A stretch of DNA of 64,000 bases from Lepidodermella squamata (lineage: Eukaryota; Animalia; Gastrotricha). The notes beneath the pieces were generated by a model. The model was not told where the DNA came from. It did no database searches and saw only the letters and a list, made by a program, of their open reading frames with translations. Position numbers and translations under genes: made by a program. The stretch is from NCBI GenBank assembly GCA_047495785.1, contig JBLDXI010000033.1, positions 1,674,001 to 1,738,000 of the forward strand. The letters run 5' to 3'. This document shows positions 9,323 through 40,635 of the stretch, one piece after another. Numbering within the stretch: position 1 is the first letter of the stretch; every line of letters begins with the position of its first letter.

Positions 9323-10325
9323 TTAGATTTGCTGATGACCACCTCCTCGAATTTTGTGCACGATGAATAGCCAACCATCCTAAATAGTTGAGAAATGTGA
9401 AAAACGCCAAATAATTGTATAGTAAGGTTGCAATACCCGAGCCATGTAAGGTAGGTCCGCCCAGAACGACCGATGCGGGATGCGATCGACACCTTCTCGT
9501 TTCTGCACGAAGGTCATGAATAGGAATCCGCCGATAAAGTAGGTCCCAAGTAGTACGAAAAATCTGAAATTCCCAACAAATCATAAACTCAGATGTTTTG
9601 CCATGAGGCGTTTTACATGATCAAGAGAATAGATCCGCCGCTAAGACCGCCACCGCCGCTACCGCCAGCTCCAATGCATACTTGTTTGCCTCGGATTTCG
9701 GAGAACTTCAAAGGCAAAGTATAAAATTCGGATCTCTTTAAGAATTGCTTATGACCCTTACATAAAGCAAATATCCATCTGGGTCTGTATCGGCTTGATA
9801 TTTATCGGGATTAAATACGATGTCGGTAGTGTTGTCGCAAATTAAGAAAGCAACAGAACGCCTAATTTCGAAGTTATTTTCATCAGTTGGAAAATTAATC
9901 ACTTACACTTTCTGCGTTGCAGAGGTCTGAGTCACCAATGCAAGTCTCATGGTCGGATTTTGAGGCGTGTTTCGCATTTCAAACGTGGTGGTTGCAGGTT
10001 CGCCAATAACCGCGTCGTAGTTTTCACTCCAATCTGCCCATTGGCAAACGCTAGCTTTTTTATAGCAATCGGCATGTTCCGGTTTCGTGTCTAAAGCTGT
10101 GCAGAAGGTGAAGTCATAACTCCAGGTTTTGTCAGGATCGGCGCCTGATAGAATTTCGCCCTTCAGGTGCGAAAGATCAACGGTGCCAGTTCCGTCAGCG
10201 AGATCGCACGAGCAAGATCCTTGCTTGTAATCAGCCGTGCATGCCGAAGCTGCTGCTTCAACTGGCCGGTATGTCAGAGCGATTAAACTCAAGACAACGG
10301 CTAGAATGTGCTTCGGATTCACCAT
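9323..10325 (-). CDS. Single-domain MRH-like (CD-MPR/ATG27-like) type I membrane protein, isolated copy, 5 exons
   Basis: Signal peptide MVNPKHILAVVLSLIAL; C..C.C..DGTGTVDL, YDFTFC, SVCQW, RSVAFLIC, DPDGYLLY; GGLSGGSILLI + TM; tail EGVDRIPHRSFWADLPYMARDGWLF...GGHQQI*, matching the CD-MPR-family IP...FW..LP...DG pattern. Confidence 0.8.
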
Positions 10326-15984: not shown

Positions 15985-16229
15985 ATGCGTTATGACTTTT
16001 TGCTCTAATATCATTGACCCAATTTTCGAAATAAAACATTACGAGTATTTGCTACACGCAATTACGCAGATCTTTATTGATTCGTTTCCAACACATGAGC
16101 AAACGCATATGACATAAATTAATCAGCATGAAATGATCATGATGAAGGAAATGTTCTTCAAAGTTCTTAGCAGAGATTGATATTGTGGGTATAGTAATCA
16201 CGTTGTTTCGCTCATCTTAATCGTTTCGC

Positions 16230-17832: not shown

Positions 17833-19070
17833 TTTAGATTGGTAGGTGAAGAAACCGAAAACCGTGAATAAACGAAAGCGAGAAGAAGATTTGCTTTGAA
17901 TTAAGCGAAAGAGCGATTGATGATTTGCAACGGTGAAGGCGCCGGGTTATATACGCTGCAGGCACGCGCCCTTCGCCAACCTGTCAACAATGGAACAATG
18001 GATCGAACTTTGGCCATCATTGTGACTGAGGCGCAGCTTAGATTGGCACGCGTTATTCCATATCGCGTGTTTCATTTTCTGGCAGTGAATATTTCTTTTT
18101 CAAATCTGTTTTTTTTGTATTACAACGAATAATATATATCTTCAACTTTCTCAATGATCAATGAAAAACAGGCGAATATTAGCGGATTCATGAGGCTTCC
18201 GCCATTTGATGCGAGGGTGGCAAAACATCTCATCCACAAATTTTCTCCCGTCATCTCGGCCCACTTGTCGATTGGCTGATCAGATTACGATTCGGTGTTG
18301 ACTAAAAGCCCCTGTGTTCTAAATTCATCATGATCCGAAGTTGCCTGAAACTCTCGTTTTTGTAATAATAATTTTGGAATTTTATTCAGCATCGCTAATA
18401 GGCAATTCAATGCAAACATTTTCTTTGGAGATTCTTTTAGGTTATTTTAATAAAAATCTTGTGATTATTTTTTAACCTGATTTTAGTGTACGACATACAT
18501 ACCTACTCTTTTGCCGTTTCCTTATGAATGATTTTCCAATATAGCGAGTATTTCCCATTCCATGCCTGGTTATTAAGTCAATTTCCTTATCGGAATTTTG
18601 CGGTGAAAGTGTGAATAGACGGAATAACTCATAATTTTGATGATATTATTTGCTTGAGCCTTCCTGATATGTAATTGACGCTGCCGATAATTAGAGACGT
18701 GTGAGTCCAGTAAAATATCTCAGCATACCAGATCTACACAAAATATTAATATTTGGTAAAAGTTGTTGTCACGAAGAACGGAAACGCATAAAAAAACGGA
18801 TACAAGTGGATAAAAAATGCGCGCAGGTGGTTGAGCGGATGTTGAGTCTCGCGCTTCACTTACTTATAGCGAAGAGCTGCCGAACAAGGTACGACAAGCG
18901 TAGGGAAAACCGGAAGCACGAAATGCAGGTCGAGCATGTAATAAGCCTCCTAAAAAACAATGAGTTCCAATTATTGAAACCTATGAAAAACGTCCTCGTA
19001 AAGTAGCTTTTCTTAGAATATATAGTACGAGATGCGAAGCCGTCTCGGAAAATGCCTCATTCAGCGTGAA

Positions 19071-19932: not shown

Positions 19933-21063
19933 TTATTGGCCAACTTTAAGCGCAGTTCTAACGCATTCTGAAGCACCAGTCAGCCGGAAAGCTTCATTAA
20001 TATCTTTCAGCTCCATTCGATGCGTGATCAGAACGTCCATTGGCAATAATCCAGCCAGGTAATCATCCATTTCCTTCGGAAGGAAATCCCGTGGCTTAGC
20101 TCGCCCGATGTCAACACCTCTGATTTTTCGCCCAGTCAACAGCAGAGCAGTAGGTATGGAAACTTCACCCAAGGCGCCGGGCTGAACTCCGATGAGAATA
20201 CACTCGCCGTAGCCGGGGTTGCTGGCATTGAACGCGTCCAAAAGTGTCTGCGGTCTACCTACACATTCGAAGGTGTAATTGCAGTCTAATCCTCCGGTTG
20301 TCTTGTTGATAGCTTCAACGGCATTGGCAGCAGTTGGGTCGATGAAATCAGTCGCGCCCAATGATTTCGCAAGCTCCAACTTCGAAGCTTTCGGATCGAT
20401 CACGATGATTTTGCTGGCACCAGCTCGCTTACAGCCAATTAGGACCGATAGGCCAATGCAACCCAGACCCCAAATTGCGCAGTAGTCGCCCGGTTTGACC
20501 TTAGCAGCTAAAACAGCGGCGCCGTAACCAGTCGTAAATCCGCATCCGAGTAGGCCAGCAATGTCAAAGGGTGAATTTGGGCTCAATTTCGAGAGCTGAA
20601 ATTCATTGCAAACAGTATACTCGCTAAACGTACCGCAGCCGAATAGGGTCCAAACAGGTTGGCCCTTGCAGGTGAACCTAGAAGTGCCGTCGTCTAGGGA
20701 ACAATTCATCACGCTGTTAACACCGGCGGAGCAGTTGTTCGATTCAGGATGGCGGCAATCAGGGCACCTGTAGCACTGGCTCGAGTAGCATGGGACGACA
20801 ATATCGCCGGCGGCTAGTCCCGTCACGCCCTCGCCGACGCTTTCAACGACCCCGGCGCCCTCGTGGCCTAGAACGATTGGGAACTTGATTTCAAGGTACT
20901 GAATCGCGCCTGTTCTCGCTGAAAGATCGGTGTGGCAGACGGAAGTTGACTTGATCTGAACGCGAACTTCGCCGCGTTTTGGTGGGGCGACCTCGATTGT
21001 TTCGATCGTCAACGGCTGGTTAGCAGCCCATGCAACAGCGGCCTTGCAAGAGATGGTGCTCAT
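19933..21063 (-). CDS. Zn-dependent medium-chain alcohol dehydrogenase, class III-derived, copy 1
   Basis: CHTD, GHEGAG, four structural-Zn Cys, GCG, GLGCIG; intronless 376 aa. Confidence 0.95.
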   Translation of the reverse strand: MSTISCKAAVAWAANQPLTIETIEVAPPKRGEVRVQIKSTSVCHTDLSARTGAIQYLEIKFPIVLGHEGAGVVESVGEGVTGLAAGDIVVPCYSSQCYRCPDCRHPESNNCSAGVNSVMNCSLDDGTSRFTCKGQPVWTLFGCGTFSEYTVCNEFQLSKLSPNSPFDIAGLLGCGFTTGYGAAVLAAKVKPGDYCAIWGLGCIGLSVLIGCKRAGASKIIVIDPKASKLELAKSLGATDFIDPTAANAVEAINKTTGGLDCNYTFECVGRPQTLLDAFNASNPGYGECILIGVQPGALGEVSIPTALLLTGRKIRGVDIGRAKPRDFLPKEMDDYLAGLLPMDVLITHRMELKDINEAFRLTGASECVRTALKVGQ

Positions 21064-21959: not shown

Positions 21960-23090
21960 TTACTCGCCCACTTTCATGGCAGCTCGGACGCATTCACTGG
22001 CAGCAGTCAATCGGAATGCTTCGTTGATGTCCTTCAACTCCATGCGGTGAGTAATAAGCTCTTCTAGGGGCAGTAGACCAGCGAGGTAGTCGTCCATCTC
22101 CTTCGGAATGAAATCTCTTGGCTTCGCGCGTCCCAGATAAACGCCTCGAATTTTACGTCCTGGCATTAGGATACTGGTTGGTATGCTGAGCTCACCCGCA
22201 CCGGGCAAAACGCCGATAAAAATGCACTCGCCATACCCGGCGTTGCTAGCATTCAAGGCGTCAAGCATTGTATTTGCCTTCCCAACACATTCAAACGTAA
22301 AGTGGCAATATTTTCCTTTAGTAAGTTTCTGTATCTCCTCAACGGCATTGACAGTAGTTGGATCGATGAAATCAGTCGCCCCTAATTTCTTCGCAATTTC
22401 GAATTTCGAAGCTTTCGGATCGATCACGATAATTTTGCTTGCACCAGCTCGCTTGCAGCCGATGAGTACCGATAGACCAATGCAGCCTAGACCCCAAATT
22501 GCACAGTAGTCACCTGGTTTGACTTTGGCTGCCAAAACAGCCGATCCGTAACCGGTCGTGAACCCGCATCCGAGTAGGCCAGCAATGTCAAAAGGCGAAT
22601 TAGGGCTCAGTTTAGCCAACTGGACTTCGTTACAGACTGTATACTCGCTGAATGTCCCACATCCGACCATTGTGTATACTGTTTGGCCTTTGCAGGTGAA
22701 TCTCGATGTGCCATCTTCCAAGGAGCAATTCAACAAGCCAACTAAGCCTGCTGGGCAATTGTTGGACTCTGGATGACGGCAGGCATCGCAGTTGTAGCAT
22801 TGGCCCGGATAACCGAAGGGAACAACAATGTCTCCAACAGCTAAGCTTGTAACCCCCTCTCCGACGCTTTCGACTACGCCGGAGCCTTCGTGACCCAAGA
22901 TTATTGGAAACTTAATTGGAAGGAATTGCAGAGATCCGCCTCTCGCAAAGATATCAGAGTGGCAAACAGATGTTGATTTGATCTGAACGCGAACTTCACC
23001 GCGTTTCGGCGGTGCAACCTCGATTGTTTCGATTGAAAGAGGCTCGTTAGCGGCCCAGACAACGGCAGCTTTGCAGGTAATTACGGACAT
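21960..23090 (-). CDS. Zn-dependent medium-chain alcohol dehydrogenase, copy 2
   Basis: CHSD, GHEGSG, GLGCIG; 376 aa, close paralogue of copy 3. Confidence 0.95.
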   Translation of the reverse strand: MSVITCKAAVVWAANEPLSIETIEVAPPKRGEVRVQIKSTSVCHSDIFARGGSLQFLPIKFPIILGHEGSGVVESVGEGVTSLAVGDIVVPFGYPGQCYNCDACRHPESNNCPAGLVGLLNCSLEDGTSRFTCKGQTVYTMVGCGTFSEYTVCNEVQLAKLSPNSPFDIAGLLGCGFTTGYGSAVLAAKVKPGDYCAIWGLGCIGLSVLIGCKRAGASKIIVIDPKASKFEIAKKLGATDFIDPTTVNAVEEIQKLTKGKYCHFTFECVGKANTMLDALNASNAGYGECIFIGVLPGAGELSIPTSILMPGRKIRGVYLGRAKPRDFIPKEMDDYLAGLLPLEELITHRMELKDINEAFRLTAASECVRAAMKVGE

Positions 23091-23777: not shown

Positions 23778-25375
23778 ATTCTGATTCTGATTCTGATTCT
23801 GATTCTGATTTTATTATGCATTTTGTTTCACAACAGTTAGCAATAGGTTAGTTCTCGGCGCCTCACCTTAGAGGTCGTAAAATCCACTAGTTCATCTGAC
23901 TTAGATTTAAGATATCGCAGAAACACAGTATGAGAATTATTGACAATAGTTGAGGGCAGCCGGTTCCACGCTGCGCGCACACGCCTTGTGAAGCTGAACT
24001 GAGAGCTCGGATGTTCAAATCGTTTCATGACAACAGCATGAGCTGGTGAACGGGGATTTGAAGATATTTTGAAGAATGTAGAAAAGCTAGCATCCACACA
24101 GCCTAGGTACATTTTATGGCATAGCGCAAGGTCATGTTGAAAGCGTCTGATTTCAAGAGGACACAGTCCTAGTTTTTTACATCTTTCATAATACGAGGCA
24201 CCGTCAATCGATGAATAGTAGTCACTTCTATACAAAAGACGTTTAGTGAACCGGGCTTGAACCGCCTCCAGCTTGTCAATATCTGTTAAGTAGTACGGTG
24301 AATAGACCGAAGGGCAAAAATCTAACCGTGAAAGAGTGTATGTTTTGTACGCTTTTAAGCGGAGAGATTTCGATGCGAATGATTTGCATATCACGCCGTT
24401 AATCCTTTGGCAACGTGTAGACAACGCATTACAGTGCTCAGAGAACGTAAGGTGTTTATCAACAATAATTCCGAGATCTTTAACTGAATCGACAGCGTTT
24501 AGCTCAACATCTTTCACTTTGAACTGAAAGGGAAATGTGTTCTTTCCAAGACTGAGAACAACGCATTTTTTTGGATTAACGGATAAACCATGTGAATCAA
24601 GCCAGCTGATGATTTTATCGAGATCTGATTGAAGTTCGATGCAATCGGCAAGACAGCGAATAGCATGATACAGCTTCGTATCGTCAGCAAAGAATTTCGT
24701 GATCGATGATTTGATCAACGTGTTGACATCAGTCGTGAAGATCAGGAAAAGCAACGGTCCGAGCACCGAGCCTTGGGGCACTCCGGAAGTAACGGTCGAC
24801 CACGAGGACGTGCTGTTATTCACGGCTACTCTGAAATAGCGGTCACACAAGAAAGCTCTGATCCACGCGTGCACATTGCCACAGATATTGATGTCAGAAA
24901 GCTTAGATAATAACAAAGTAATCGGAACAACATCGAAGGCTTTCGAGAGGTCAAGATATATCACTATTACGTCAATTAGTTGATCAAGGAACTCTAACCA
25001 TTCGTTGACACACGACAACAACTGTGTTTCGCAACTTCTCCGTGACAGAAATCCAAACTGATTTTCTGAGATCAGATTGTTTCTATAAAGGTACAGTAGC
25101 ACATGATCCTTTACAATCGTTTCCTGAATTTTGCAGATCACACATGTCAGACTCACAGGGCGATAATTCCCAACACACGAGGCATCGCCGTTGCGTTTAA
25201 AGATCGGCGCGACATTCGCATGCTTCCAGACCACTGGGATCTCCCCTTGAGAAAACGAAATGTTGAAAATCATTGCCAAAGGTACAGCCAAGGAGAGAGA
25301 TAGCTTCTTTATAAGTACAGCCGGTAGATTATCGGCACCACCGATGGGTTTATCTTTAATACCACAGATCACATT
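23778..25375 (-). mobile_element. 5'-truncated non-LTR retrotransposon (CR1/L2-like), uninterrupted RT ORF 25372-23837, (AATCAG)n 3' tail
   Basis: NYRPVSLT, QFGF, YLDLSKAFD, SGVPQGSVLGPLLF, FADD, KDLGI; five ATTCTG units at 23778-23807 (+ strand) just past the stop; no endonuclease domain. Confidence 0.93.
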
Positions 25376-25698: not shown

Positions 25699-26826
25699 TC
25701 ATTCGCCAACTTTCATGGCAGCTCGGACGCATTCACTGGCAGCAGTTAATCGGAATGCTTCGTTGATGTCCTTCAACTCCATGCGGTGAGTAATGAGCTC
25801 GTCCATGGGCAGTAAACCAGCGAGGTAGTCATCCATCTCTTTTGGAAGGAAATCTCGGGGCTTCGCGCGACCCAGATAAACGCCTCGAATTTTGCGGCCA
25901 GGCATTAGGATACTGGTTGGGACGCTGAGTTCACCCATACCCGGCAAAACGCCTACAAAGATACATTCGCCATACCCGGCGTTGCTAGCATTTAAGGCAT
26001 CAAGCATTGTGCTGGCTTTACCAACACATTCGAACGCAAAGTTGCAATCCTTTCCTTTTGTAAGCTTCTTTATCTCCTCAACAGCATTGACAGCAGTTGG
26101 GTCGATGAAATCGGTCGCTCCCAATTTCCTCGCTATGTCGAATTTCGAAACTTTCGGATCCATGACGATGATTTTGCTCGCACCAGCTCGCTTGCAACCA
26201 ATGAGTACTGATAGACCAATGCAGCCGAGACCCCAAATCGCGCAGTAGTCACCCGGTTTGACTTTGGCTGCCAAGACCGCTGCTCCATAACCAGTCGTGA
26301 AGCCGCATCCAAAGACACCGGCAATGTCAAAAGGTGAATTAGGGCTCAGCTTAGCCAACTGGACTTCATTACAGACCGTATACTCGCTGAAGGTCCCGCA
26401 ACCAAATAAAGTGTTGACTGTTTGGCCTTTGCAGGTGAATCGAGAGGTGCCATCATCCAGGGAGCAATTAATCACGCTTTTCAGGCCAGATGAGCAATTG
26501 TTAGATTCTGGATGACGGCAATCATCACAGTTGTAGCATTGACTCGTAAAGCAGGGAACCACGATGTCTCCAATGGCTAGACTCGTAACCCCCTCTCCGA
26601 CGCTTTCGACTACGCCGGAGCCTTCGTGACCCAAAATTATTGGGAACTTGATAAGAAGGAATTGAACAGCTCCGCCTCTTGCAAAGAGATCAGTGTGACA
26701 AACAGATGTTGATTTGATTTGAACCCGAACTTCACCGCGTTTCGGCGGTGCAACCTCGATTGTTTCGATTGAAAGAGGCTCGTTAGCAGCCCAGGCAACT
26801 GCAGCTTTGCAAGTAATTACGGACAT
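25699..26826 (-). CDS. Zn-dependent medium-chain alcohol dehydrogenase, copy 3
   Basis: CHTD, GHEGSG, GLGCIG; 375 aa. Confidence 0.95.
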   Translation of the reverse strand: MSVITCKAAVAWAANEPLSIETIEVAPPKRGEVRVQIKSTSVCHTDLFARGGAVQFLLIKFPIILGHEGSGVVESVGEGVTSLAIGDIVVPCFTSQCYNCDDCRHPESNNCSSGLKSVINCSLDDGTSRFTCKGQTVNTLFGCGTFSEYTVCNEVQLAKLSPNSPFDIAGVFGCGFTTGYGAAVLAAKVKPGDYCAIWGLGCIGLSVLIGCKRAGASKIIVMDPKVSKFDIARKLGATDFIDPTAVNAVEEIKKLTKGKDCNFAFECVGKASTMLDALNASNAGYGECIFVGVLPGMGELSVPTSILMPGRKIRGVYLGRAKPRDFLPKEMDDYLAGLLPMDELITHRMELKDINEAFRLTAASECVRAAMKVGE

Positions 26827-28479: not shown

Positions 28480-28803
28480 GTTGATTTGGTAATTATCAGG
28501 AAGAGAAACATATTTAATGGCTGGAATCGTTCGGTATATATACCCTGGAAAACAGCTGGCTAAACTTGCACCGACGTCAATTTTTTCATCGGCGTCATCC
28601 ATGAGTTTCGGAAAAACTACTGTTCTATTTACTTGCACCGAGACAACGACGTTTACCTCGTTGCGATATGCGTAAAACGGAAATCTTATGACGCAGTTTT
28701 CAGAACGTTTTATTGATGCAAAATATTTGCTTATTCAATCATGTGATAATATATCATGTCCAAGTTTGATCAGTCGCCAATTTTCGTCGTTACCAGCCGA
28801 TGT

Positions 28804-31800
28804 TTAGTGGCCGCAGAACTGTGATCCCGAAATTTCCATATACTGAAATTGGCATTTTTTACAACAAATAGCGGAGATGTGCGAAGAAACTTACGTAAAG
28901 CAAAGAACCATCAGAATCTCGTTGGCCTTGGTAACCAAATGGCTCGAATTTGATCTGCTTCGATGAATCGCAATTAAGGAAAGCGACTGTTCGTCTCGGA
29001 GTACCATCGGCGGCCGACGAGTCAGAGACTAGAGCTAAGGCTGCCTTAGGATGCCGATCATTGCTTCGTAATTCGAACCGGGTTGAATTGGCAGAGCCAA
29101 TATCCATGTTATAAGTTAGCTGCAGGGAATACTCGCATACCTAAATACACGAAGAAAGCTCGAAGCTGAATCAAATGATGTTAAGGTGGTTCGTACCGAA
29201 GCCACTCCGTTGCATAACGGATAGCGATTATCGTAGATAGGTTCAAAGAATGAGTAATCGTAGGAGAAGCGCTCTCCAGTTCCCGATATTCTTGATTTAA
29301 TATAGTGGGAATTAAAGTGAGAATCTTGAGCGCTAGAGCTTAAGTTACCTGGTGCCAACCAGAGAAGTAAGTTCGACTGTTCCTAAGCCATTAGTTGTAA
29401 CACATACGGGACTTCCTCTCTCGTAGTTTTTACAAGCTGCATTGCCTATACATTTTCTTACAGAAGACAGATGTCATTGAAAAAGTCAGCTCACTTGGAT
29501 TTCGAATAGGGCAAAAAGTAGAGCCAGTGAATTCGGCGAACTGCAAAATTTAAAAAATTCAATAACAATTTACAATAAAATATGCTGCTTTTACATAAAC
29601 TTGGTATCCATCGGCGTCTTTAAGGTAGCTGCCGCCAGTGGTGGTGAAGTTGGCAACAGCCGGTGCATCTGGCTCACATTTCAAAAAGGCCACCGTGCGA
29701 CTCTTGGTCGCGCTGTTGTCGTTGACAAGCGCTAAAGTAGGGCCGTTATTGTTCGCATCGTATCTAAGCTCGAATCGTGTGTTCTCCGGTCTCCCAATGT
29801 TCGACTCCGTATTCCAAACCGTGCTGTATCTGCAAACCTAGAGAATTCATAGAGTGATGAAAAGGGTTCGAACGAAGTTCCACAGAAAGATCTTATATCT
29901 TATCAAGATGGCCGTTCATATTACAAGAAATTGAAATTAAACTGAGGGGGAGCATTATGGGAAGCAATTTATAGGGTGGTAAAAAGGGGCTCCTTTCAAA
30001 TAGAAAAACTTCCTTTCAAATAGCGACAACTTACCGCTGCCGATTCGAAGCAGAATGAGAAGCTTGGATCCTTATTTACGCCACAAAAGGTGTAGGCATA
30101 ATTGTTATCAAAGTCATCTGATGCGACGTATCTGCAACACGACAGATTATCATAAAAATGAAACGATTTCTAAACATTTCTCACGGGTGGTAATAGGTTG
30201 TTTCGACTAGCGGCGATAGATCAACTGTCCCTGTTCCGTCCGCCAATTCGCAAATGCACCATCCGCGTAAATCAGGGTTGCATGCGGGTTTACCTTTTAA
30301 GTCATCAAACCTTAATGTACAGGCGGGATGGAATGAAGCTAGCTTTTACCGGGTAGAAGTCGAGGGCAGAAGTCAGATCCGAACATTTGGAAATACTACA
30401 AGGAAAATTGCAACCAGGCGCTGAATTAAACAATTGAACTCACGTAAATATCGTAGCCATCGAAGTCTTTTTCCTCAATGAACGATGCAGGAAAGAATAT
30501 AGGATCAGGGAGGTCGAGACATAATGTGAAGACAATCGAGCGGCGCTTGGTGACAGGGCTTTCCGTTACGATGGCCAAAGCAGGATTAGGGCTGGTGGAG
30601 GAATAAGGGCTGTGCCGTAGCTCGAACCTTGTTCGGAGAGGATCGCCAATCAGCACGCCACCAGGAGCAGCATCGAAATATTGGCAAGCTGATGACTGTT
30701 TATAGCAGTTATAGTGGGATGCGTTGTTAAGATAGTTGCAGAAGGCGTAGTCGTAATGGTAGCCGTCTTCGTAGCCATGAAGAGGCTCAATAGCGGTTTT
30801 CTGAACTAGCCTCGATAGGTCGATATTGCCCCCGCCATTTGCAAGCATGCAGGAGCAAGAGCCCTCTTTCGAGCTTTCCTCGCAAGCCGGTTTCGGATCT
30901 GAGAAATGCTTAGAGAATTAATCTAATATCATTAAAATCGAGTTGTTTACAAGGGTATTGAGGGCAAAAAGCGGATCCAGTCAAATTTGCATGCTAAAAA
31001 TAAGAATACTAAACTTTGAATCCAATTGGAAAATACAAACTTACATATAATTCTTTGCCATCAGTATCCCGAAGGCCATCGTAGTCGAAAGGTGAGAAAA
31101 CTGGCTCAGTGATACTCGAGTCGCAGGAGAGGAAAATAACCATTCTTGCTTCATATCCAAACATGGCATCAGCGACAATAGCCAAATTTTGGCTAGAGTA
31201 GAACGACGACCCGGGGTACGTTCTATATTCAAAACGCATGGTCGCCGGGTCTCCAAATGGTAGACCTCCCTGAGTTGGAGGAACAGTCTTTTGATAACGG
31301 CAGATCGCTGCATTTCCATTGCAACGAAATAGGAAGGGATCATTATTCAAGGTGCCAAAGAGCGCCAAGTCGTAAGAGTAATGGCCGGAAGGATCAGTAG
31401 CCTGATACGGTCGAGTTCGAGTAGAATTAGCGATTGATGTCAAATTCATCCACAGGTAGCTTGAGGACGGATCAGAAAGCTGGCACTCACTGTTGCCAGG
31501 TTTGTAGTCTTCATTTTGGCAGGCGGACCTTGGTGACGCTGGTCAAACTCAAAATTATAGTATTTCATGAAATTCCTTTCTATTGCTTACGTGGTTGAAT
31601 GGCACATGCATCTGCGCCTTTGATGACTAAGTACTATAAACATTACAATCTCTGTCTGTATTTGTTATTTCATCACTTAGACTGATTACTTACCTTTAGC
31701 TCATATCCATCCAAATCATAGAAATTGTTTCCTGGTTGGTAAGATTTCAATTCCAGAGTACGCTCGATACCGCAAACTAAAAACGAGATTGACCGCAAGC

Positions 31801-32986
31801 GGATATCCGTGGACTCCATGACCATCGCAGGTTGAGGTGAATTGCTCGGAAATAACCCTATAGGCGGGACGCGGGCTTCGAAACGCGTAGTTGAAGGATA
31901 TGCCTCGGCCTGATTGTATCGCATCGGAACGTACTGACAAATGGATGCTTTGTTGTAGCAGTTACGCTGGGTGATATTGCTTCTCAAAGCTGAACAGAAT
32001 GCCAAGTCGTATGATACGCCTTGAGCATCTTTGGTGCGAAGAGGTGAGTATGGGGTGGTCATTTGAAGAGCTCGATAGTCCAAGTAAGATCCGTTTTTCA
32101 TGCGACAGAAGCAATCACCAATATCGTAATCCACAGTACAAATAACGGGATCTTGGGGTACGAGTTAAAAAATCATTGATTTTAAAAATTGCACCACCAA
32201 ATACTTACCGACTTTTTGAGGGCAAAAAGCCGCGCCGTAGAAGTCCATAAACTATAAAACATGCACACCTTCAGCATGAAACGTTTTTGGAAAATAACTT
32301 ACAAATAGGTAAGCTCCATCGGTGTCTTTTTGCATGTTGTACTTGTAGGCTTGATAAGTGACCGAATCATTAGTTGGATCACAGTTGAGAAAAGCAACGC
32401 TTCTGGATATTCCGAGATTGACTATAGAATATACGCCACAAGTTGATTTCCTTGAAGTATGGTAACGCAATTCTTACAATCGGCATTTTCCGCCACAAGA
32501 GCTAGAGCAGGCTGTGGGTGGTTGTCGCCGGTCCTCATCTCGAATCGCACGCTTGAGGGCTGACCGAGATTTCTGCTGAAATTAGGCAAGTCGAACCTGC
32601 ATGCCTGTTTTTTCGCACAAAAATAAGTATGCGCTGTTGTAATTGAAGTTATTAATGCTGCTCCTCACCACTGCCTGTCGCTCGCAATCTTCCGCTCCCG
32701 TGTTATTCATAGCTTCGCAAAAAGTATAGAAGAAGCGCTCGGTGCTTAAAACGTCCGACGCGTAACTGTGATTTCAAAAATGACATTAGTCACTGGTGGT
32801 GGAAACAGGTGGTTCTTCTTACGGGTTTGTTCTGCTATGGACCCGCAAGCCAGTCAAATCTATAACCCCACTGCCATCAGCAAGGTTGCAGGTACAAGTC
32901 GTCGATGGGTACGTACAAGGGCTATTCGCGGCTATTACGACCCCGAAGCCAAGCAATGACACGAGAAGGAATGATTTCCCCAGCAT
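28804..32986 (-). CDS. Secreted protein of six tandem MRH-like domains, no TM segment, multi-exon
   Basis: Signal peptide MLGKSFLLVSLLGFGVVIA; hand-splicing gives six repeats (D1 ~32930-32210, D2 ~32150-31590, D3 ~31540-30950, D4 ~30900-30350, D5 ~30290-29495, D6 ~29445-28804), each with RFE.R, AL/M.V, R(S/T/M)..F..C, D.DG and G...C; ends SQFCGH*. Confidence 0.75.
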
Positions 32987-33559: not shown

Positions 33560-34060
33560 TCGATTTATCATTGTATTGATGCAAAGGTTGGGCTAAATTT
33601 CTGAATACATATTATTCTTGTTTTGTGGCTCAGGCAAAAAATCGGGGTCATCCTGCGTCCGTTCACATTTACGTCACATGCTCGATGGTGCCCTAAATTT
33701 TCACAAAACTTTCATTTTTGAACTTCAACCACATACTCCGTCAATTTGGATCCGCGATGACACTTGGAGGGTTCAGCTCAAGCAGTTATTTGAGCTTACC
33801 CACATTACAGGTGCATGATAGGCCTCATGATAGATCCAGGAGACTTCATGGTTGAGCAGTGGCAAGTGCTTGAAGAAAGTATGCCACTCTAAGGTATGCA
33901 TATATAGGTAGCCTTGGCCTAGTGATTTGGCGCCAGAAAATAACCAAATAATAGGATAATGTCTCATGGATAATGGCGATACACAAAAATATGGTCATCC
34001 AATAACTTCTTTTATTTCTGTTATTTTGCACATCATTCAAGAAACTAAAGTTTGACATGT
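33560..34060 (-). pseudogene. Possible degraded His-box membrane protein (sterol desaturase/fatty acid hydroxylase-like)
   Basis: Fragments in different frames: hydrophobic WMTIFLCIAII, YMHTLEWHTFFKH...YHEAYH, and HHRACDVN; no clean gene model. Confidence 0.2.
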
Positions 34061-34068
34061 AAATTGAA

Positions 34069-35179
34069 TCAATGTTTTCCACACATTTTCAAACTGTTCC
34101 AAGCGAAAAAGAATCCATCCTGTAAATTGAGTAAATAATCACGTACAAATAGGATATTCTATGAAAAAGAACCTTAGCGGCTCCGGGGAGAGATGCCCAG
34201 AATTGGCTGTGAGGGATTCGATCAGCTCCCTCTCGCTTTTTCCCGAAGGTCAGAAATACAAATCCGCCAATAAAATAAACACCAGCTACGGAGAAAAATC
34301 TGAAGGAAGATCGAAATTTTGTATTACAATCTCATCTTTTAGCGGCAAAATCAAACATAATGAGGAGAATAGAACCTCCACTCAGTCCGCCCCCACCGCT
34401 TGGACCGACCCATTCAACCGGGCAGAAGTCTTTACCGTAAAACTCCATGTACTGAAAAGGCGATTCGTTGTCAATTCGAGACCGATAGCTATAAGTGTAA
34501 ACTTACATAAAGAATGTAGCCATCTGGGTCTTTGTAGCCCTCATTGCCAAAAGAGTCGTATTTAACCTGCGTTGAAGTCGTATCGCAGTTCAAGAAAGCA
34601 ACAGATCTACGAGATTTTCCTGTATTATTTTCGCAAACTTATCAAAACGAAAGCGAAAATCAGAAAAATTCACCGTCGGCATTTTCAGAATCTGCGACCA
34701 ACGCTACTGCTGGCTGAGGATGTTTGTTGCTAGTTCGCATTTCGAATCGAATCGTTGATTGCCGGCCTAAATTTGCACTGTAAATGAAAGACCCGGAATA
34801 TTCGCACACCTATAAGGCTTGAACGATTTCAATTTTCAAATTGGTTGAAATGGTGAAAAATTACTGCAGCTGTGCCGTCACAATTAGGATAGCCAGTGTT
34901 CTGAAGGGTGCCACAGAATTGGTAGATGTATTTGTATTGATTATTTTGAGCTCGAAATCTATGGAATTTTTGTAAAAGGCCCAGAACATTGTAACAAGGA
35001 ATAACTTACGGGGTTGAAACCGTTAATTCCACCAAGCTAGTTAAGTTGATAGCTTTTGACTCGTCACTTTTCAATTGACAGATACACGTGTCTTTCTGGT
35101 CTGACACGCAAGCATTTTCGGCAGCTTTTGCTATAGGGTTCGCTATGAGAAGTAGAACTGCTAAGATTATAGGAAGCAT
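34069..35179 (-). CDS. Single-domain MRH-like type I receptor R1
   Basis: MLPIILAVLLLIANP signal; VCEYS, RFEMR, RRSVAFLNC, DPDGYILY; GGLSGGSILLI-TM; tail EGADRIPHSQFWASLPGAAKDGFFFAWNSLKMCGKH*. Confidence 0.78.
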
Positions 35180-35317
35180 TTCATAATACCTATTAAGCAA
35201 GAAAACTCATCAGATTATCATATCAAGGAAATCTTTTTAATTTTTCATTATCAATTAATTTTATTTCGCGAAGCCGTTGGAATCTCGAAGCGATGATCTT
35301 AGGAAATTTGAGGTGAT

Positions 35318-36372
35318 TTACCGACTCCCACATCGCATTTTGATGCTGTTGAAAACGTAGAAGAATCCATCCTTTGCCAGACCGGGTAAGGAAGTCCAAA
35401 GCGTGACGTTAGGTACGCGTTCGGCGCCCTCCTTCTTTTTGCCGAATGTTAAGAACAAGAAGCCGCCGACGAAGTACGTGAAAATCAGGCAGAAGAAACT
35501 TGTAAAATAGTGTTCAATGTTGATGGAAGTTACTTGAAATAAAGAACTTACACAATGCACAAAATGGAACCGATACTGAGTCCTCCATCGCCACCTCCGG
35601 TTGAAGGGGTGGTCGGTCCTACCGGAGTTGTTGGTCCAACGGGGGTGGTTGTGCAGAAATCTTTCCCGGTGAAGTCCATAAACTGTAGTTCGTAAACTTC
35701 AAAAATTGTTGAATTTTTTTTATTGCAAATCATACGTAGAGCAAGTAGTTATCTGGATCTTTTGTGCCCGAGGATCCATAGGAATCGTACTTGATGTTTG
35801 AAGCTGACTGATCGCAGTTCAAGAATGCTACCGAGCGCCGTAGAGTGCCATCTATGTTATTCGAATCCGCGACTAACGCGATCGTCGGCGAAGTATGCTG
35901 AGCGCCTGTTCGCATTTCAAAGCGGAATGTCGCTGCCCGACCTAAATCCATGTTGTAGCCTGTTGAGTATTCGCACACCTGTAAGATTTTTTACAATAAA
36001 TTACCCGCTAATGTCCTATAAATTAGATGAAAAATACCGCTGCAGCTCCATTGCAGTTATTAAGCGACGGCTGAGTTGTTATGGTTCCACAGAAAACATA
36101 CCAATACTTATAGTTGGTATTGGAACCAGCAATGCTAGGAAATTCACATTGGTTAAAAAAATAGATTGAAATGGCTCGTCCTCTCACGGGTTTTGTTGCG
36201 TTGTCCTAGAAAGAGCCGTCAGGTCAAGAATTTTATTCGAGCCATCGGACAATTCGCAATAGCATTGACCCCTAGCGGTCGACTTGCAAGCGTTTGTCGC
36301 CATGGGTAACGCCAATGAGTTGACGCTGACCACGAATACTAACAGGAGTAAGGCGATTGATTCTGCATGCAT
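35318..36372 (-). CDS. Single-domain MRH-like type I receptor R2 (3' end uncertain)
   Basis: MHAESIALLLLVFVVSV signal; CEYS, RRSVAFLNC, DPDNYLLY; TTPVGP-repeat stalk; TM; tail EGAERVPNVTLWTSLPGLAKDGFF...CGSR. Confidence 0.78.
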
Positions 36373-36554
36373 TTTGCTGTCTGTTAAATTTACTATTCTC
36401 AACTCCTGTGATTATAATAGCTCAATGACAGTGGGATAAACGCATTTTTTTATCTTCATTTTTACCCCCATTAAACCAACCAACTGATAAGAAGTGATGG
36501 CAACGTCAAATTTATTCAGCTAAAATTAAGCGTATATAAGTAAAAATTGTGAAT

Positions 36555-37583
36555 TTAAACACTAGTATAGGACGAGCCACAGCATTTTTTCGCCTTGTGA
36601 TAGGTGAATAAGACACCTTCCTTAATATTGCCAGGTAAAGTTCTTGTCCAGAATTCGAAATGTGGTAGCCGTTCAGAGCCTTCCTTCTTCGAGTAGAACG
36701 TCAGGAAAAGGAATCCTCCAATGAAATAAGTCGATAGCAGCGTGAAAAATCTGATCGGAAAAGCCTGATTTAAGCATTGATTTGTTCGAAATTCAAAAAC
36801 TCACATGATTAGAAGAATTGAACCAGCGCTCAGGTCGTCTCTTGGTGGTTCACGCGCGCAGATATAAGCAGATGTTAACACCATGTTCTGAAATTCACCC
36901 TTAAACTTATGAAAAATGACCTTTTCATCGATAAACTAACATAAAGAGTATAACCATCTGTATCTTGCTGATTTCCTTTCATTTCCAATTTAGCTGACGC
37001 AGTTGCTGCAGGATCACAATGAAGGAAAACGACAGTCCTTTTTGTTATACCCGGGCTAGCATCCATCACAAGAGCAGCCATCTCCTCATTGTTCTGATCT
37101 TTTCGAACTTCGAATCTAGTTGTTGCCGGAACTCCTATGTCGTTACCGTTCTTGCTAGTTGTTGAATACTCACAGGACTGAAACGCGAATCTTTGGTATC
37201 ACTCTAATCAATCTCAAAACCAAGGCTTACCGCTGCGATATTATTACAAGCCGGCCATGTTGTTTTACCAGTGATAACACCGCATAAAACCAGGTAATAA
37301 TTATTCTTCAAAGTTTGAGCGAAGATCCTATTAAAGTTTCAGATTTATGCATGACAGCTTCATTTTATCAATTTTACGGTGAATTTTTCGATTGTTCGAC
37401 TAGAGTAGTGAGATCTACGACTCCAGTGCCATTAGCCAGGTTGCAGATGCATTTGGTCGGTTCAGTCACCGAATCACTTTTGCAAGCATCCAAATAGTCG
37501 CAATTAACGAGACAAGATCCGATCAGGAGACATGCTGCGAAAATTCGGATGATTCTAATGTAATCTATATCTAAACTAGTCAT
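36555..37583 (-). CDS. Single-domain MRH-like type I receptor R3
   Basis: CICNLANGTGVVDL, SCEYS, KRTVVFLHC, DTDGYTLY; TM; tail EGSERLPHFEFWTRTLPGNIKEG...CCGSSYTSV*. Confidence 0.78.
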
Positions 37584-37888
37584 CTTTAGGGCGTTTAATG
37601 CGTCGGGAAAATGCCTACTGAAGGCCATAAGTCTGGGATAACTGATAAGGGAGCCCAATTATCAGCCGAAGTTTCGACCCCTTTATGCTTCTATGACTAA
37701 TGGCAAAGGAAAACAAAAAAATAACCGTACACTTTTTTGCTTTATTGGCAAGATAGCTATAGATAAAGATGAGTGTGGTGAAAATCGAGGAGAATATACA
37801 CAGAAATGTTGTCATCATCTACTTCACATAAATTTTCAGGACATTCAAGTATACAACACGCCTAAACAGTTGATTTGAATACAGCTTG

Positions 37889-39076
37889 TCACTCTTTGTT
37901 GTAGCCGTAATCCGTTCCCATATCAGCGTCCTTGTAGCCAGTGTTCTCGAACTCCTGATACTGAGTTTGCGGCCGAAATCGAAAGCAAATGACATCGAAA
38001 CAATCCTTCACATTTAGGGATATATTTCACATTTCTGGAAAATAAAAAGAAATTACCTTGAACTTTTGATAGACAACGTCATGCCAGAAGGTATAGTTCG
38101 GAATGCGCTGCACGCCGGTATGCTTATAAACGATTGTCATTACTAGGAAACCCCCGCCAAAGTAGGCGGCGATGATGACGATAATCCTGTCATATCGAAG
38201 CATTTGAAAATTAAATGGAAATTGCGGTTTTCAACGTACACGATGAAAAATATTGCGACACCACTCGTTCCTTCGCTAGCTTGGTGATGCTGCTGAATGG
38301 TACGACCATAATTCGGACAGACAGGGGCACCTCGAAGCTCGGAATACTGTAAAAGAAATTGTGTTCGAGGAAATATTGAAACGCTTTTAGGTTATACATA
38401 AAGCAGGTAGTTATCGTGATCTCGCTCGCCTTCGTAGCCTCGAGCTGTAAACGTAAGGTGCCGTTGATTCTCATCACATGTCAGAAATATAAGGCTTCGC
38501 CTAAATTTATCGGTAAATCCGAATAATTAAGGGCATTTTTAAGCTGGCTCCTTACGCATTGGACTGCTGTGTCGATTCCATGACGAGAGCAAGCCGTGGA
38601 GGCACGTAGTAGTCGGTTGCTTTTGTTTTGTAAGTCCGCCACTCGAAGCGAGTCGTCGACGGCTCGCCGATGTTCAAGCTATAAGGCAGTGGTTTAGTCC
38701 GCGTTTCGCACAGAGACGCGGCCTGATTGCAGCCCTGAAATTGCGGGTTCTTCATCTTACCACATAGGACAAGGTAATACGTGAAAAACCCTGTCGCAGA
38801 AGTTATCCTGATCGAAATTAAAATCGTAAATCTATCGAAATTCCATGGGTTAAAAACTTACGGTTGTCGCGAAGTTTGATCAGCAATATGGCGCAGGTCA
38901 ATTTTGCCGGTTCCATCGGCCAAGTTGCAGACGCAATTGCCATGTCGAAACTCCTTATCGCAGGCTTTAACTGGGGCAGTTTGAATAATCTGGGCGTTGC
39001 AAATCGAGAAGAGGCTGAGGAAAGTTAAAGCTAGGGATCGGGCTTTGATTTCCCCTAAACTTTTGCCATCTCTCAT
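37889..39076 (-). CDS. Single-domain MRH-like type I receptor R4
   Basis: CVCNLADGTGKIDL, LCETR, RSLIFLTC, DHDNYLLY; TM; longer tail ...QRIPNYTFW...QYQEFENTGYKDADMGTDYGYNKE*; TATAAA on the minus strand at ~39129-39134. Confidence 0.78.
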
Positions 39077-39580
39077 TTTTTTAAGCACAGGTGATGGATG
39101 AGCCTAGCATATACAGTCAAGTCAAGGATTTATAGGCAGTCGATTTGACGCGCGGCGTAGTACCTAGCGAAATAAGTGTAAAATTAACGAGAAAGCCGCG
39201 GCTTCCGGCTCGCCAAAAGCTCGAACTGCAATTAGGTAAGTCTGCGCACAGACGGCGAATGGCTCTTTCGATTTTGAGCTTCGCAGTATAGGTAGATTGC
39301 GAACGAGCGAACGCATCGAAATTTTAATATTAATCGCTATCATCAACAGTATTATTAACATTCGGCTTGTCATAACCGCGAGCGTCACTTTGAAATTAAA
39401 AAAGATAAGCACTGGAACACGCAGGTATGCGTTATCGATTTTTCTTCATAAATTTCGAAGAAAATCAATACCTATTAGGATCATATCGGCGGAGAAAATC
39501 CGCTTTTTTCGCCCTGTATGGATATTTTTCAATGAAAAAGAGTTATATAACGGCAAAATAGTGCTTTATTTAGTTTTCAA

Positions 39581-40635
39581 TCAAACATTATCATAACCAC
39601 CGCGACCTACGCACATTGATTTCAACTTGTTAAAAGTGAACAAGGTGCCCTCTTTCGCCGCACCGGGTAGCGTTGACCAGAAGTTGTAGTGAGGAACTCG
39701 TTCTGTTCCTTCTTTCTTCATGCCGAAAGTCAGAATCGCCGTTCCGCCGACGAAATAAACAAATATTAGAACGAAAAATCTGGATTTTCGAAGTTATTGG
39801 TGATTTAAAGATCGATCATTCGAGAATAAAACTAACATTATCAGCATAATGGACCCGGCGCTTAGGTCGTCACTGCCTCCACCTGTATTCCCGCCATCAG
39901 TGCAAAAATCACCTCCTTTAGTCTCCATATACTATCACAGAAACAGGAATAGTAAATTATTGAGTTATATACGGGAAATCAAATTACGAATAGCTGGTAG
40001 CCATCCTTGTCCTTTTCATTATTATTGCCCCTTGCTGTGAACACGACGGTTGCTTGGTTCTCGACGCATGTTAGAAATACGACAGTTCGCCTGGAATTTA
40101 GTAAAAATGTTATGACAATTTTTAAAATAAATTTTAGAATATTTCTCACGATGGTGGTGTCGTAGTCGTGGTGTCGGCTACCATTGCTAATCGAGCCCGC
40201 GTTCCGGCTGGGTAAACTCGCATTTCAAACCTCGTAGTGGCGACATCGCCAACGTTGAAGTTGTAAGAGCCTGTATCAGGCATACGTGTTTCGCAAACGG
40301 CAGCTTTGTTGTAGCACTGCGTCCACTGTGGATTTTTGATTATTGGGTTGCAAAATGCTAGGTAGTAGTAGTTCTCTTGCTTGTCATCCAAGACTCCGAG
40401 TCTAAAAGGGAATAATCAGTGTCTCATGACAGAGAGTCAAGACATCTTACGGATTGTTCGCGGTTGACTTAGAGAGACTAGTCAGGTCTATAGTGCCTGA
40501 ATTGTCGGCCAGCTTACAAACACACGTCCCTTGCCTATAGTCGGCGGTACAAGCTGAAGGTTCTGCATTGGCATGGTGAATCAAAATCGAACTGATAACG
40601 AATAAAGATCTTAGAAGTAAAGACAGTCGCTTCAT
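39581..40635 (-). CDS. Single-domain MRH-like type I receptor R5
   Basis: MKRLSLLLRSLFVISSILI signal; VCETR, RTVVFLTC, DKDGYQLF; TM; tail EGTERVPHYNFWSTLPGAAKEG...CVGRGGYDNV*. Confidence 0.8.

What the first reader, a model, noticed from the sequence alone, without database searches (positions are those of the whole stretch)
28804..32986. Secreted six-domain MRH-like protein built from phase-1/phase-1 modules
Seen: all five inter-domain introns are phase 1 (G|AT, C|CG, T|AT, G|GT, A|GC); there is one signal peptide and the frame stops at FCGH* with no TM. The single-domain paralogues have no introns at these boundaries. Established: class 1-1 modules drive exon shuffling; the known multi-MRH receptor (CI-MPR) is membrane-bound. 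Inference: independent origin of a CI-MPR-like repeat architecture, as a soluble protein, from local single-domain genes.
Basis: partly seen in the sequence, partly recalled or inferred. Interest (0 to 1): 0.75.

Follow-up and report, generated by a model that had tools for sequence, protein, structure and literature searches.

The report
Soluble six-domain mannose-6-phosphate-receptor-like lectin
A small, unidentified invertebrate has an intact 19-exon gene for a signal-peptide-bearing, anchor-less protein of six mannose-6-phosphate-receptor-type lectin domains; it was built inside a lineage-specific family of single-domain receptor genes, independently of the 15-domain vertebrate receptor, and its function is untested.

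Summary
One coherent minus-strand model (32986-28804) has 19 exons, 18 GT-AG introns and 1019 codons. It encodes one signal peptide, six ~165-aa Cys-rich domains and no transmembrane segment. All five inter-domain introns are phase 1.

The domains have the P-type lectin (MRH) fold of the mannose-6-phosphate receptors. The AF2 model of domain 4 has pLDDT 94. It aligns at Z 12.9 to IGF2R, about 10 to CD-MPR and about 7 to OS-9. A family profile hits bovine CI-MPR at E 7e-57.

The domains belong to a lineage-specific clade of at least 32 domains in this genome (support 100/99), separate from CI-MPR repeats. The membrane members keep a CD-MPR-type membrane span and tail.

- The six domains are not one clade (AU p 0.0017). 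D1, D5 and D6 belong to one sub-lineage and D2-D4 lie outside it.
- The gene is not unique. Anchor-less 2- and 3-domain paralogues exist elsewhere in the genome, and one shares the same phase-1 junction.
- Independent arrays of such domains also occur in other animals.

Only D4 keeps the canonical sugar-binding Gln and Arg.

This scan noted the same stretch before (s1-421997). There is no transcript or ligand evidence. I rate it a new variant of a known kind, of moderate interest.

The parts
32209..32986 (-). Domain 1 with the signal peptide. Exons E1 32986-32823, E2 32765-32669, E3 32604-32478, E4 32421-32303, E5 32251-32209. Internal intron phases are 2, 0, 1, 0, the same pattern as neighbour R1.
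32152..32208 (-). Inter-domain intron D1|D2, 57 nt, phase 1 (G|AT)
31591..32151 (-). Domain 2: large exon E6 32151-31694 plus last-strand exon E7 31633-31591
31539..31590 (-). Inter-domain intron D2|D3, 52 nt, phase 1 (C|CG)
30951..31538 (-). Domain 3: E8 31538-31045 plus E9 30993-30951. It has 6 Cys; two of the eight conserved positions are missing.
30899..30950 (-). Inter-domain intron D3|D4, 52 nt, phase 1 (T|AT)
30350..30898 (-). Domain 4: E10 30898-30444 plus E11 30395-30350. The E10 product was folded (pLDDT 94.4). D4 is the only domain with both the Gln348-equivalent and the Arg391-equivalent residue.
30294..30349 (-). Inter-domain intron D4|D5, 56 nt, phase 1 (G|GT)
29495..30293 (-). 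Domain 5: E12 30293-30185, E13 30131-30035, E14 29837-29595, E15 29540-29495. Includes the one long intron (197 nt).
29446..29494 (-). Inter-domain intron D5|D6, 49 nt, phase 1 (A|GC)
28804..29445 (-). Domain 6 and the stop codon: E16 29445-29349, E17 29290-29197, E18 29140-28895, E19 28842-28804 (TAA at 28806-28804). The protein ends directly after the last beta-strand, ...YMEISGSQFCGH.
28709..28714 (-). AATAAA polyadenylation-type hexamer about 90 nt after the stop. The next same-strand ORF starts at 28638.
   Evidence: read directly; ORF
34060..40635 (-). Tandem array of five single-domain paralogues: R1 35179-34060, R2 36372-35300, R3 37583-36540, R4 39076-38000, R5 40635-39570. Each has a signal peptide, one domain, a membrane span and a CD-MPR-like tail. 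Their 3' ends are approximate.
9380..10325 (-). R0, a sixth single-domain membrane paralogue. Its tail exon 9383-9580 passes Pfam PF02157 Man-6-P_recep (29.4 bits, cut-off 25.4).

Best explanation
This is one real, intact gene. It encodes a 1019-aa soluble protein of the secretory pathway: a signal peptide, then six P-type lectin (mannose-6-phosphate-receptor / MRH fold) domains, with no membrane span, tail or retention motif.

It belongs to a lineage-specific expansion of CD-MPR-like genes, with at least 32 domains in this 121-Mb genome. The membrane members keep the CD-MPR membrane span and tail.

The array was assembled from at least two domain sub-lineages. D1, D5 and D6 are of the R1/R2/R3 type, and D2-D4 are of another type. 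Each junction lies exactly where single-domain genes have the end of the signal peptide on one side and the start of the stalk on the other.

The origin I think most likely (inferred) is fusion of tandem same-strand neighbours. The stalk, membrane span, tail, intergenic DNA and next signal peptide were either deleted, giving fused exons as in the 2-domain paralogues, or spliced out as a phase-1 intron that later shrank to the genome's ~50-nt minimum. A 1-1 unit, once formed, could then be re-used.

The function I think most likely (inferred) is a multivalent glycan-binding protein, either in the secretory or endolysosomal lumen or outside the cell. The pockets have diversified. Only D4 keeps the canonical Gln and Arg of mannose / Man-6-P binding. 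The others have Arg or Glu at the Gln position.
For: Gene model: 19 exons, all GT-AG, open frame throughout. D2-D6 have no start codon or signal peptide of their own.

Fold: the AF2 model of the D4 exon has pLDDT 94.4. The top ~40 Foldseek hits are all CI-MPR or CD-MPR. VIA-align gives Z 12.9 (IGF2R d11-14), 11.9 (CI-MPR d3), about 10 (CD-MPR), 7.5 (GNPTG) and 6.8-7.1 (OS-9), then drops to 3.4.

Sequence: family profiles hit only CI-MPR in the PDB, at E 2.4e-24 and 6.8e-57. The profile search of 1.84 billion proteins returns CI-MPRs and CD-MPR-like single-domain proteins.

Phylogeny: the local family is a clade at 99 and 100/99, and CI-MPR repeats form a separate clade at 98. D1-D6 as one clade is rejected, p-AU 0.0017.

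Intron pattern agrees with the tree: D1 matches R1, D5 and D6 match R2 and R3, and D2-D4 lack those introns.

Soluble: no hydrophobic span beyond the signal peptide. No tail or membrane-span exon lies downstream on the strand. AATAAA sits 90 nt after the stop and the next ORF starts 165 nt after it. The 3-domain paralogue L001 ends the same way, YMELTGNEFCATK-stop.

Constraint: Cys counts are 8, 8, 6, 8, 8, 6, so losses are in twos. The 3-domain homeologue pair has dN/dS 0.20.

Pathway context: the genome also has a canonical CD-MPR orthologue with the same intron splitting its membrane span and a GNPTAB-type Stealth_CR2 gene.
Against: No transcript, protein or ligand data exist. Splicing is inferred from sequence only.

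Pfam does not recognise any single exon product of the gene. Homology needed a family profile or a structure model.

Only one domain was folded, without its last strand, and the model's coordinates could not be inspected. The pocket assignments rest on sequence alignment.

Five of the six domains lack the canonical Gln + Arg pair, so sugar binding may be altered or lost.

The fusion-of-neighbours origin is a scenario. The domains are old (27-36% identity) and the short introns keep no trace of it.

No orthologue of the six-domain gene was found in another species. Only single-domain-like fragments turned up.
Confidence: 0.72

Rival explanations
1. The protein is membrane-anchored after all. 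An alternative or unrecognised 3' exon would supply a membrane span and tail, as in its paralogues and in CI-MPR or LERP.
For: All six single-domain paralogues in the window carry a membrane span and tail. There are no transcript data to exclude alternative splicing.
Against: tblastn with all six tail exons finds no match on the minus strand between 28.8 kb and R0's own tail at 9.4-9.6 kb. The stop codon directly follows the last strand. AATAAA lies 90 nt downstream and another gene's ORF begins at 28638. The 3-domain paralogues L001/L003 and the single-domain gene in L010 end in the same anchor-less way, and no tail exon was found in L001-L007.
Confidence: 0.07
2. The array arose by serial internal tandem duplication of a single 1-1 domain module. 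On this view the five phase-1 introns are copies of one ancestral intron.
For: The five junctions are at homologous positions. The last-strand exons are 43-46 nt, and each intron lies 3-5 codons before the next first Cys. D2-D4 share one exon layout and may be a local triplication.
Against: D1-D6 as one clade is rejected (p-AU 0.0017). D1, D5 and D6 sit in a clade (94/96) with R1-R3 and L001 d2/d3, and D2-D4 lie outside it. Intron content differs between the two sets. Partial re-use of the junction, for example within D2-D4, is not excluded.
Confidence: 0.12
3. It is a decaying or non-functional gene fusion: a read-through artefact of a tandem array that has no selected function.
For: There is no expression evidence. 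Five of six domains lack the canonical Gln + Arg pair. One family member elsewhere, L002, carries an in-frame stop.
Against: The 1019 codons are open across 18 correctly phased canonical introns. The core motifs and an even Cys count are kept in every domain although the domains are only 27-36% identical, which implies long-term constraint. The soluble 3-domain paralogue pair has dN/dS 0.20.
Confidence: 0.06
4. It is a truncated or derived CI-MPR / LERP orthologue rather than an independent array.
For: PDB sequence hits are exclusively CI-MPR. Most domains have 8 Cys, as in CI-MPR repeats (by my recollection). No canonical CI-MPR was found in this genome with PF00878 or P0004.
Against: CI-MPR repeats form their own clade (98) apart from the local family (99). 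The family's membrane members have the CD-MPR-type span and tail (PF02157) and share the span-splitting intron with the canonical CD-MPR gene. The negative CI-MPR searches are exon-by-exon and weak.
Confidence: 0.03

Closest known systems
Cation-independent mannose-6-phosphate / IGF2 receptor (CI-MPR) and Drosophila LERP
   Same: Tandem array of P-type lectin (MRH fold) domains behind one signal peptide. Best structural matches (Z 11-13) and the only PDB sequence matches. Most domains have 8 Cys.
   Different: Six domains rather than 15 (LERP has 5). No membrane span, cytosolic sorting tail or FnII insert. The domains fall in a separate clade, so the array is of independent origin. Only one domain keeps the Gln + Arg pair.
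Cation-dependent mannose-6-phosphate receptor (CD-MPR, Pfam PF02157)
   Same: This is the lineage the family most likely comes from. The single-domain paralogues R0-R5 have a signal peptide, one domain, a membrane span and a tail that passes PF02157. They share the span-splitting intron with the genome's canonical CD-MPR gene. Fold Z is about 10.
   Different: The six-domain protein has lost the membrane span and tail and is multi-domain. The lumenal domain has 8 Cys (by my recollection CD-MPR has 6) and is too diverged for Pfam to see.
Soluble MRH lectins of the ER and Golgi: OS-9, XTP3-B/erlectin (two MRH domains), GNPTG, glucosidase II beta
   Same: Soluble lumenal proteins with one or two MRH domains. 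They show that anchor-less MRH proteins function as glycan readers.
   Different: Clearly lower structural similarity (Z 5.6-7.5 against 10-13). No ER-retention motif here. Six domains. The family affiliation is with the MPRs, not with OS-9.
Independent multi-MRH arrays in other organisms
   Same: Repeated, independent multiplication of MPR-type domains. Examples are P0011 (six near-identical repeats ending in a hydrophobic C-terminal stretch that I read as a membrane span), P0029 (four), the Pinctada protein P0028 (three), and Trichomonas MPRs with 1-5 MRH domains (bioRxiv 10.64898/2026.10.22.760878).
   Different: P0011 ends in a hydrophobic C-terminal segment and the Trichomonas MPRs carry a membrane span; I did not check P0028 or P0029 for an anchor. 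P0011 and P0029 have recent, near-identical repeats. Here the six domains are old, of mixed descent, and anchor-less.

Membership tests
P-type lectin / MRH fold (MPR superfamily) | Flattened beta-sandwich MRH fold | tested here: met
   AF2 model of the D4 exon has pLDDT 94.4. VIA-align Z is 12.9, 11.9 and about 10 to IGF2R, CI-MPR d3 and CD-MPR. All 39 top rows are MRH proteins, then Z drops to 3.4.
P-type lectin / MRH fold (MPR superfamily) | Detectable sequence homology to MPR domains | tested here: met
   Pfam on single exons finds nothing. Family profiles hit CI-MPR only: E 2.4e-24, 6.8e-57, and 1q25 at 1.4e-13.
P-type lectin / MRH fold (MPR superfamily) | Canonical sugar-binding Gln, Arg, Glu, Tyr | tested here: inconclusive
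   The Gln348 column is the residue after the 6th Cys (HMMER alignment). D1-D6 read R, Q, R, Q, R, E. The Arg391 column, 8 residues before the 7th Cys, holds R only in D4 and D6. Glu and Tyr could not be placed without coordinates. An invariant D-x-D-G and a mostly conserved Tyr lie in that region.
CI-MPR / IGF2R orthologue | Domains group with CI-MPR repeats; about 15 repeats, a membrane span and a sorting tail | tested here: not met
   Separate clades at 98 and 99. Six domains and no membrane span.
CD-MPR (PF02157) | Single lumenal domain, membrane span, and a cytosolic tail matching PF02157 | tested here: not met
   Not met by the six-domain protein, which has no span or tail. Met by its paralogues: R0's tail exon scores 29.4 bits against a 25.4 cut-off, and further tail exons are found.
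OS-9 / XTP3-B type soluble ER lectins | MRH domain of the OS-9 type; ER residency | tested here: not met
   Z is only 5.6-7.1 to OS-9, XTP3-B and Yos9, against 10-13 to the MPRs. The C-terminus is ...FCGH, with no KDEL/HDEL.
Exon-shuffled class 1-1 module | Module flanked by introns of the same phase | tested here: met
   Five of five junctions are phase 1 at homologous positions.
Exon-shuffled class 1-1 module | The same intron-flanked module is found in otherwise unrelated genes or in the presumed donor genes | tested here: not met
   The single-domain genes have no flanking introns. L005, L006/L007 and L001 d1/d2 have no inter-domain intron. Only L001/L003 d2/d3 shares the junction. No non-family gene with the module was seen.

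The most novel reading that the evidence does not exclude
This could be a genetically encoded, secreted, six-site P-type lectin, which I have not found described as a class. It would have evolved independently of CI-MPR by fusing tandem CD-MPR-like genes, and it carries Gln, Arg or Glu variants at the key pocket position. It would then act outside the cell or in the gut or lysosomal lumen as a multivalent binder of phosphomannosyl or other glycans. Possible roles are recapture of lysosomal enzymes or recognition of microbes and food. In that case the expansion to at least 32 domains would be a new lectin-based recognition repertoire of this animal lineage.
Probability: 0.3. Interest if true: 0.65.

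Novelty: new variant of a known kind. Interest (0 to 1): 0.45.

Why it matters
MPR-type domains are mostly known as membrane cargo receptors (CD-MPR, CI-MPR, LERP) or as one- or two-domain ER lectins. An intact, anchor-less, six-domain form of mixed descent shows that the CI-MPR-like tandem design can arise again from single-domain receptor genes. It sits next to its single-domain relatives, so the steps of domain accretion can be studied: fused exons in some paralogues and phase-1 introns in this one.

If it binds glycans, it would extend P-type lectins to soluble multivalent recognition. The alternation of Gln, Arg and Glu at the pocket position offers a natural series for specificity studies. 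The interest is limited by three things: no expression or ligand data, an unidentified host, and independent MRH arrays already known elsewhere.

Tried and rejected
All later work used coordinates only.
- Pfam on six exon products of the gene found no MRH family. Pfam on R0's lumenal exons also found nothing; only its tail exon hit.
- The word search with the D4 exon found nothing. Its length filter excludes the full protein.
- The first AF2 run, with a 4-row alignment, was unusable (pLDDT 49). It was replaced by the 38-row run.
- A profile of the C-terminal half found no PDB sequence match, so the Glu and Tyr pocket residues could not be placed by sequence.
The syntenic 24,237-nt ENA contig could therefore not be fetched.
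- The arginine-kinase search meant to name the organism gave no close named relative. The host stays unidentified. 'Rotifer' is only a guess from earlier scan notes.
- PF00878 and a CI-MPR protein found nothing in the own genome. I treat this as 'not found with these queries', not as absence.
- My first dN/dS run used out-of-register coordinates. It was corrected.
- Rejected readings: CI-MPR truncation, one-domain internal duplication, a hidden membrane-span exon, and a pseudogene array. See the rival explanations.
Full report
**Observation**

Reading the minus strand from 32986 and fixing exon ends by coordinates gives one coherent model. It has 19 exons, a 3060-nt CDS and 1019 codons. All 18 introns are GT-AG; 17 are 48-64 nt and one is 197 nt.

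Each junction lies 4-5 codons after the last Cys of one domain and 3-5 codons before the first Cys of the next. The small exons that carry the last beta-strand are 43, 43, 43, 46 and 46 nt. A second periodic set exists: a phase-0 intron before that last strand in all six domains.

The protein starts MLGKSFLLVSLLGFGVVIAA... and ends ...SGSQFCGH-TAA (28806-28804). Hydropathy shows only the N-terminal signal-like segment (Kyte-Doolittle, 19-residue window, 2.04). Nothing else exceeds 1.5, whereas the paralogues' membrane spans score 2.3-2.75. D2-D6 begin in phase 1 and have no start codon or signal peptide of their own, so separate genes are not a coherent reading.

**What was left out or closed**

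Those tools were given single exons by reference. The joined model was built only inside local scripts, for coordinates, hydropathy, alignment, a local HMM and trees.

**What the domain is**

Pfam sees nothing in single exon products and the word search found nothing. A profile of family members hits only CI-MPR chains in the PDB:
- a 4-row profile gave E 0.013;
- a 13-row profile gave bovine CI-MPR at 2.4e-24;
- a 38-row profile gave 6.8e-57, and the N-terminal three domains (1q25) at 1.4e-13.

The 1.84-billion-protein profile search returned 136 hits. They are CI-MPRs with 10-16 matched repeats, single-domain proteins of about 250-290 aa that carry Pfam Man-6-P_recep/ATG27, and short unannotated fragments of close relatives. 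Named single-domain hits come from Mercenaria, Nematostella and Tubulanus, and a two-domain one from Branchiostoma.

With the 38-row alignment, AlphaFold2 models the large D4 exon at pLDDT 94.4. A 4-row attempt had failed at 49. The first ~40 Foldseek hits are all CI-MPR or CD-MPR. VIA-align gives:
- Z 12.9 to IGF2R d11-14;
- Z 11.9 to CI-MPR d3;
- Z about 10 to CD-MPR;
- Z 7.5 to GNPTG;
- Z 6.8-7.1 to OS-9;
- then a drop to 3.4.

The fold is therefore the P-type lectin / MRH fold, closer to the MPRs proper than to the ER lectins.

**Family context**

The window holds six single-domain paralogues on the same strand: R1-R5 in tandem just upstream (34.06-40.64 kb) and R0 at 9.38-10.33 kb. Each has a signal peptide, one domain, a Gly-rich stalk, a membrane span split by a phase-2 intron, and a tail of the form GGFLF.TF.KKEG.ER.P...W..LPG. 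R0's tail exon passes Pfam PF02157 (29.4 bits, cut-off 25.4), and further tail exons match.

The genome (121 Mb, 151 contigs) holds at least 32 such domains. It also has a canonical CD-MPR orthologue on another contig with the same span-splitting intron and a GNPTAB-type Stealth_CR2 gene. PF00878 and a CI-MPR query found nothing. I read that only as 'not found with these queries'.

The six-domain gene is not the only anchor-less form:
- L001/L003, apparently a diverged duplicate (homeologue) pair, encode three domains and end YMELTGNEFCATK-stop.
- L005 and L006/L007 encode two domains.
- L010 holds a single-domain gene that ends right after the last strand.
- No tail exon occurs in L001-L007.
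- The L001/L003 pair has dN/dS 0.20 over 281 codons.

**Descent of the six domains**

In a 92-row domain tree the 38 local rows form one clade (SH-aLRT 99). These are D1-D6, R0-R5, the genome paralogues and fragments from related species. CI-MPR repeats form another clade (98), and the other animals' single- and multi-domain proteins a third group.

A careful tree of the family gives 100/99 for the family. It also gives a sub-clade (94/96) that holds D1, D5, D6, R1-R3, L008/L009 and L001 d2/d3. D2-D4 lie outside it with the R0 and L001 d1 type. Holding D1-D6 together costs 36 log-likelihood units (p-AU 0.0017).

Intron content agrees with the tree:
- D1 has R1's exact pattern (phases 2, 0, 1, 0).
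- D5 and D6 have the R2/R3 pattern (2, 0, 0).
- D2-D4 have one large exon each.

The domains are 27-36% identical to each other, no closer than to the R genes at 27-44%. The array is therefore old and of mixed descent. D6 is most like L001 d3 (48%), and both are chain-terminating domains.

**The phase-1 junctions**

The single-domain genes have no intron at either domain border, so they cannot be donors of ready-made 1-1 modules.

In L005, L006/L007 and L001 d1/d2, the last strand of one domain and the start of the next lie in one exon. The L001/L003 d2/d3 junction is different. It has the same 46-nt last-strand exon (YADFYGRAFCPQKNT, compared with D1's FMDFYGAAFCPQKV) followed by a phase-1 intron. 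The junction type is thus older than this gene and confined to the family.

The acceptors lie where single-domain genes have the signal-peptide cleavage region, and the donors lie where the stalk begins. My inference is fusion of same-strand tandem neighbours. The intervening stalk, span, tail, spacer and signal peptide were either deleted, giving fused exons, or spliced out as an intron that later shrank to the genome's ~50-nt norm. The 1-1 unit may then have been re-used, possibly within D2-D4. The uniform phase is what an in-frame array requires. It is not five independent events.

**Soluble status**

tblastn with all six tail exons finds nothing on the minus strand between 28.8 kb and R0's own tail at 9.4-9.6 kb. 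AATAAA lies at 28714-28709, and the next ORF on the strand starts at 28638. An earlier scan note calls that ORF an expansin-like gene. There is no KDEL/HDEL and no hydrophobic C-terminus. Whether the protein is secreted or stays in the lumen cannot be told from sequence.

**Function (inferred)**

HMMER aligns the residue after the sixth Cys with the Gln of CI-MPR domain 3 (VCQ). By my recollection of the literature numbering this is Gln348. D1-D6 read R, Q, R, Q, R, E at this position. The membrane paralogues read E, except R0, which has Q.

The Arg391 column, eight residues before the seventh Cys, holds Arg only in D4 and D6. An invariant Arg sits one residue later in all domains. Only D4 therefore keeps the canonical Gln + Arg pair. 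An invariant D-x-D-G and a mostly conserved Tyr precede the last strand, but I could not place the Glu and Tyr equivalents without coordinates (one search gave no sequence match).

Cys counts are 8, 8, 6, 8, 8, 6, so losses come in twos, as expected if a disulfide pair is lost together. The most likely role is a multivalent glycan binder with diversified pockets.

**Comparison and novelty**

Independent arrays of MPR-type domains are not rare:
- P0011 has six near-identical repeats and ends in a hydrophobic stretch that I read as a membrane span.
- P0029 has four repeats.
- A Pinctada protein has three.
- A 2026 preprint reports Trichomonas MPRs with 1-5 MRH domains and a few protist MPRs without a membrane span (bioRxiv 10.64898/2026.10.22.760878).

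Two literature searches turned up no description of an anchor-less six-domain MPR-type protein. I file it as a new variant of a known kind, and not as a member of CI-MPR, CD-MPR or the OS-9 group.

**Limits**

- No orthologue in another species was found. Close relatives appear only as fragments, several on one 24,237-nt ENA contig that also carries the neighbouring arginine kinase at 70% identity.
- The JGI metagenome scan found nothing.
- The organism is unidentified.

Noticed in passing
window 2137-3222 (+) and 7342-8445 (+): Two intron-free arginine/phosphagen kinase genes lie in tandem. The closest relative (70% identity) sits on an unnamed 24,237-nt ENA contig; three family-related fragments (P0002, P0006, P0138) also list a longest contig of exactly that length, so I take it to be one syntenic contig. 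The nearest named hits are a sponge (Dysidea avara, 65%) and bacterial phosphagen kinases (about 55%).
   Followed up: partly
window 19933-21063, 21960-23090, 25699-26826 (-), and 23837-25372 (-): Three tandem 375-376-aa ORFs; the first is a zinc-type alcohol dehydrogenase by Pfam and the other two were not scanned. A 511-aa reverse-transcriptase ORF (RVT_1) is inserted between the second and third.
   Followed up: no
L001 (G000:C54:248500-254500) vs L003 (C23:1181500-1187500); L006 (C46) vs L007 (C29); L002 (C54) vs L004 (C23): Family members occur as diverged duplicate pairs on different contigs, about 91% aa identity and dS about 0.2. This looks like homeologous (ancient duplicate) chromosome segments. 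The window's own cluster has no such partner in the assembly.
   Followed up: partly
L002:2060-2587 (-): A single-domain family member has an in-frame stop inside the domain (QWAE*SSS), which its partner L004 lacks. It may be a pseudogene or an unrecognised short intron.
   Followed up: no
L010 (G000:C33:1480000-1485000), 1718-2330 and 2502-3150 (+): Two adjacent separate genes of the family lie about 190 kb from the window. The first ends ...AAVCPVKIRRNGH-stop right after the last strand, so it is an anchor-less single-domain form.
   Followed up: partly
L012 (G000:C12:331500-335500), about 1446-2640 (+): Canonical CD-MPR orthologue, with QQRRRTMIMISC, CHYMFEIETRHIC and the tail ...NLVADGCDFVFR. 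It is distinct from the expanded family but has the same intron inside the membrane span.
   Followed up: partly
window 16000-18000 and 56000-58000: Two GC-rich islands (0.58-0.59, against about 0.42 for the window) carry long overlapping ORFs on both strands.
   Followed up: no
P0011 (ENA contig of 7198 nt): An unrelated organism encodes a protein that also happens to be 1019 aa. It has six near-identical MPR-like repeats and a hydrophobic C-terminal stretch that I read as a membrane span. This is an independent, recent array.
   Followed up: partly
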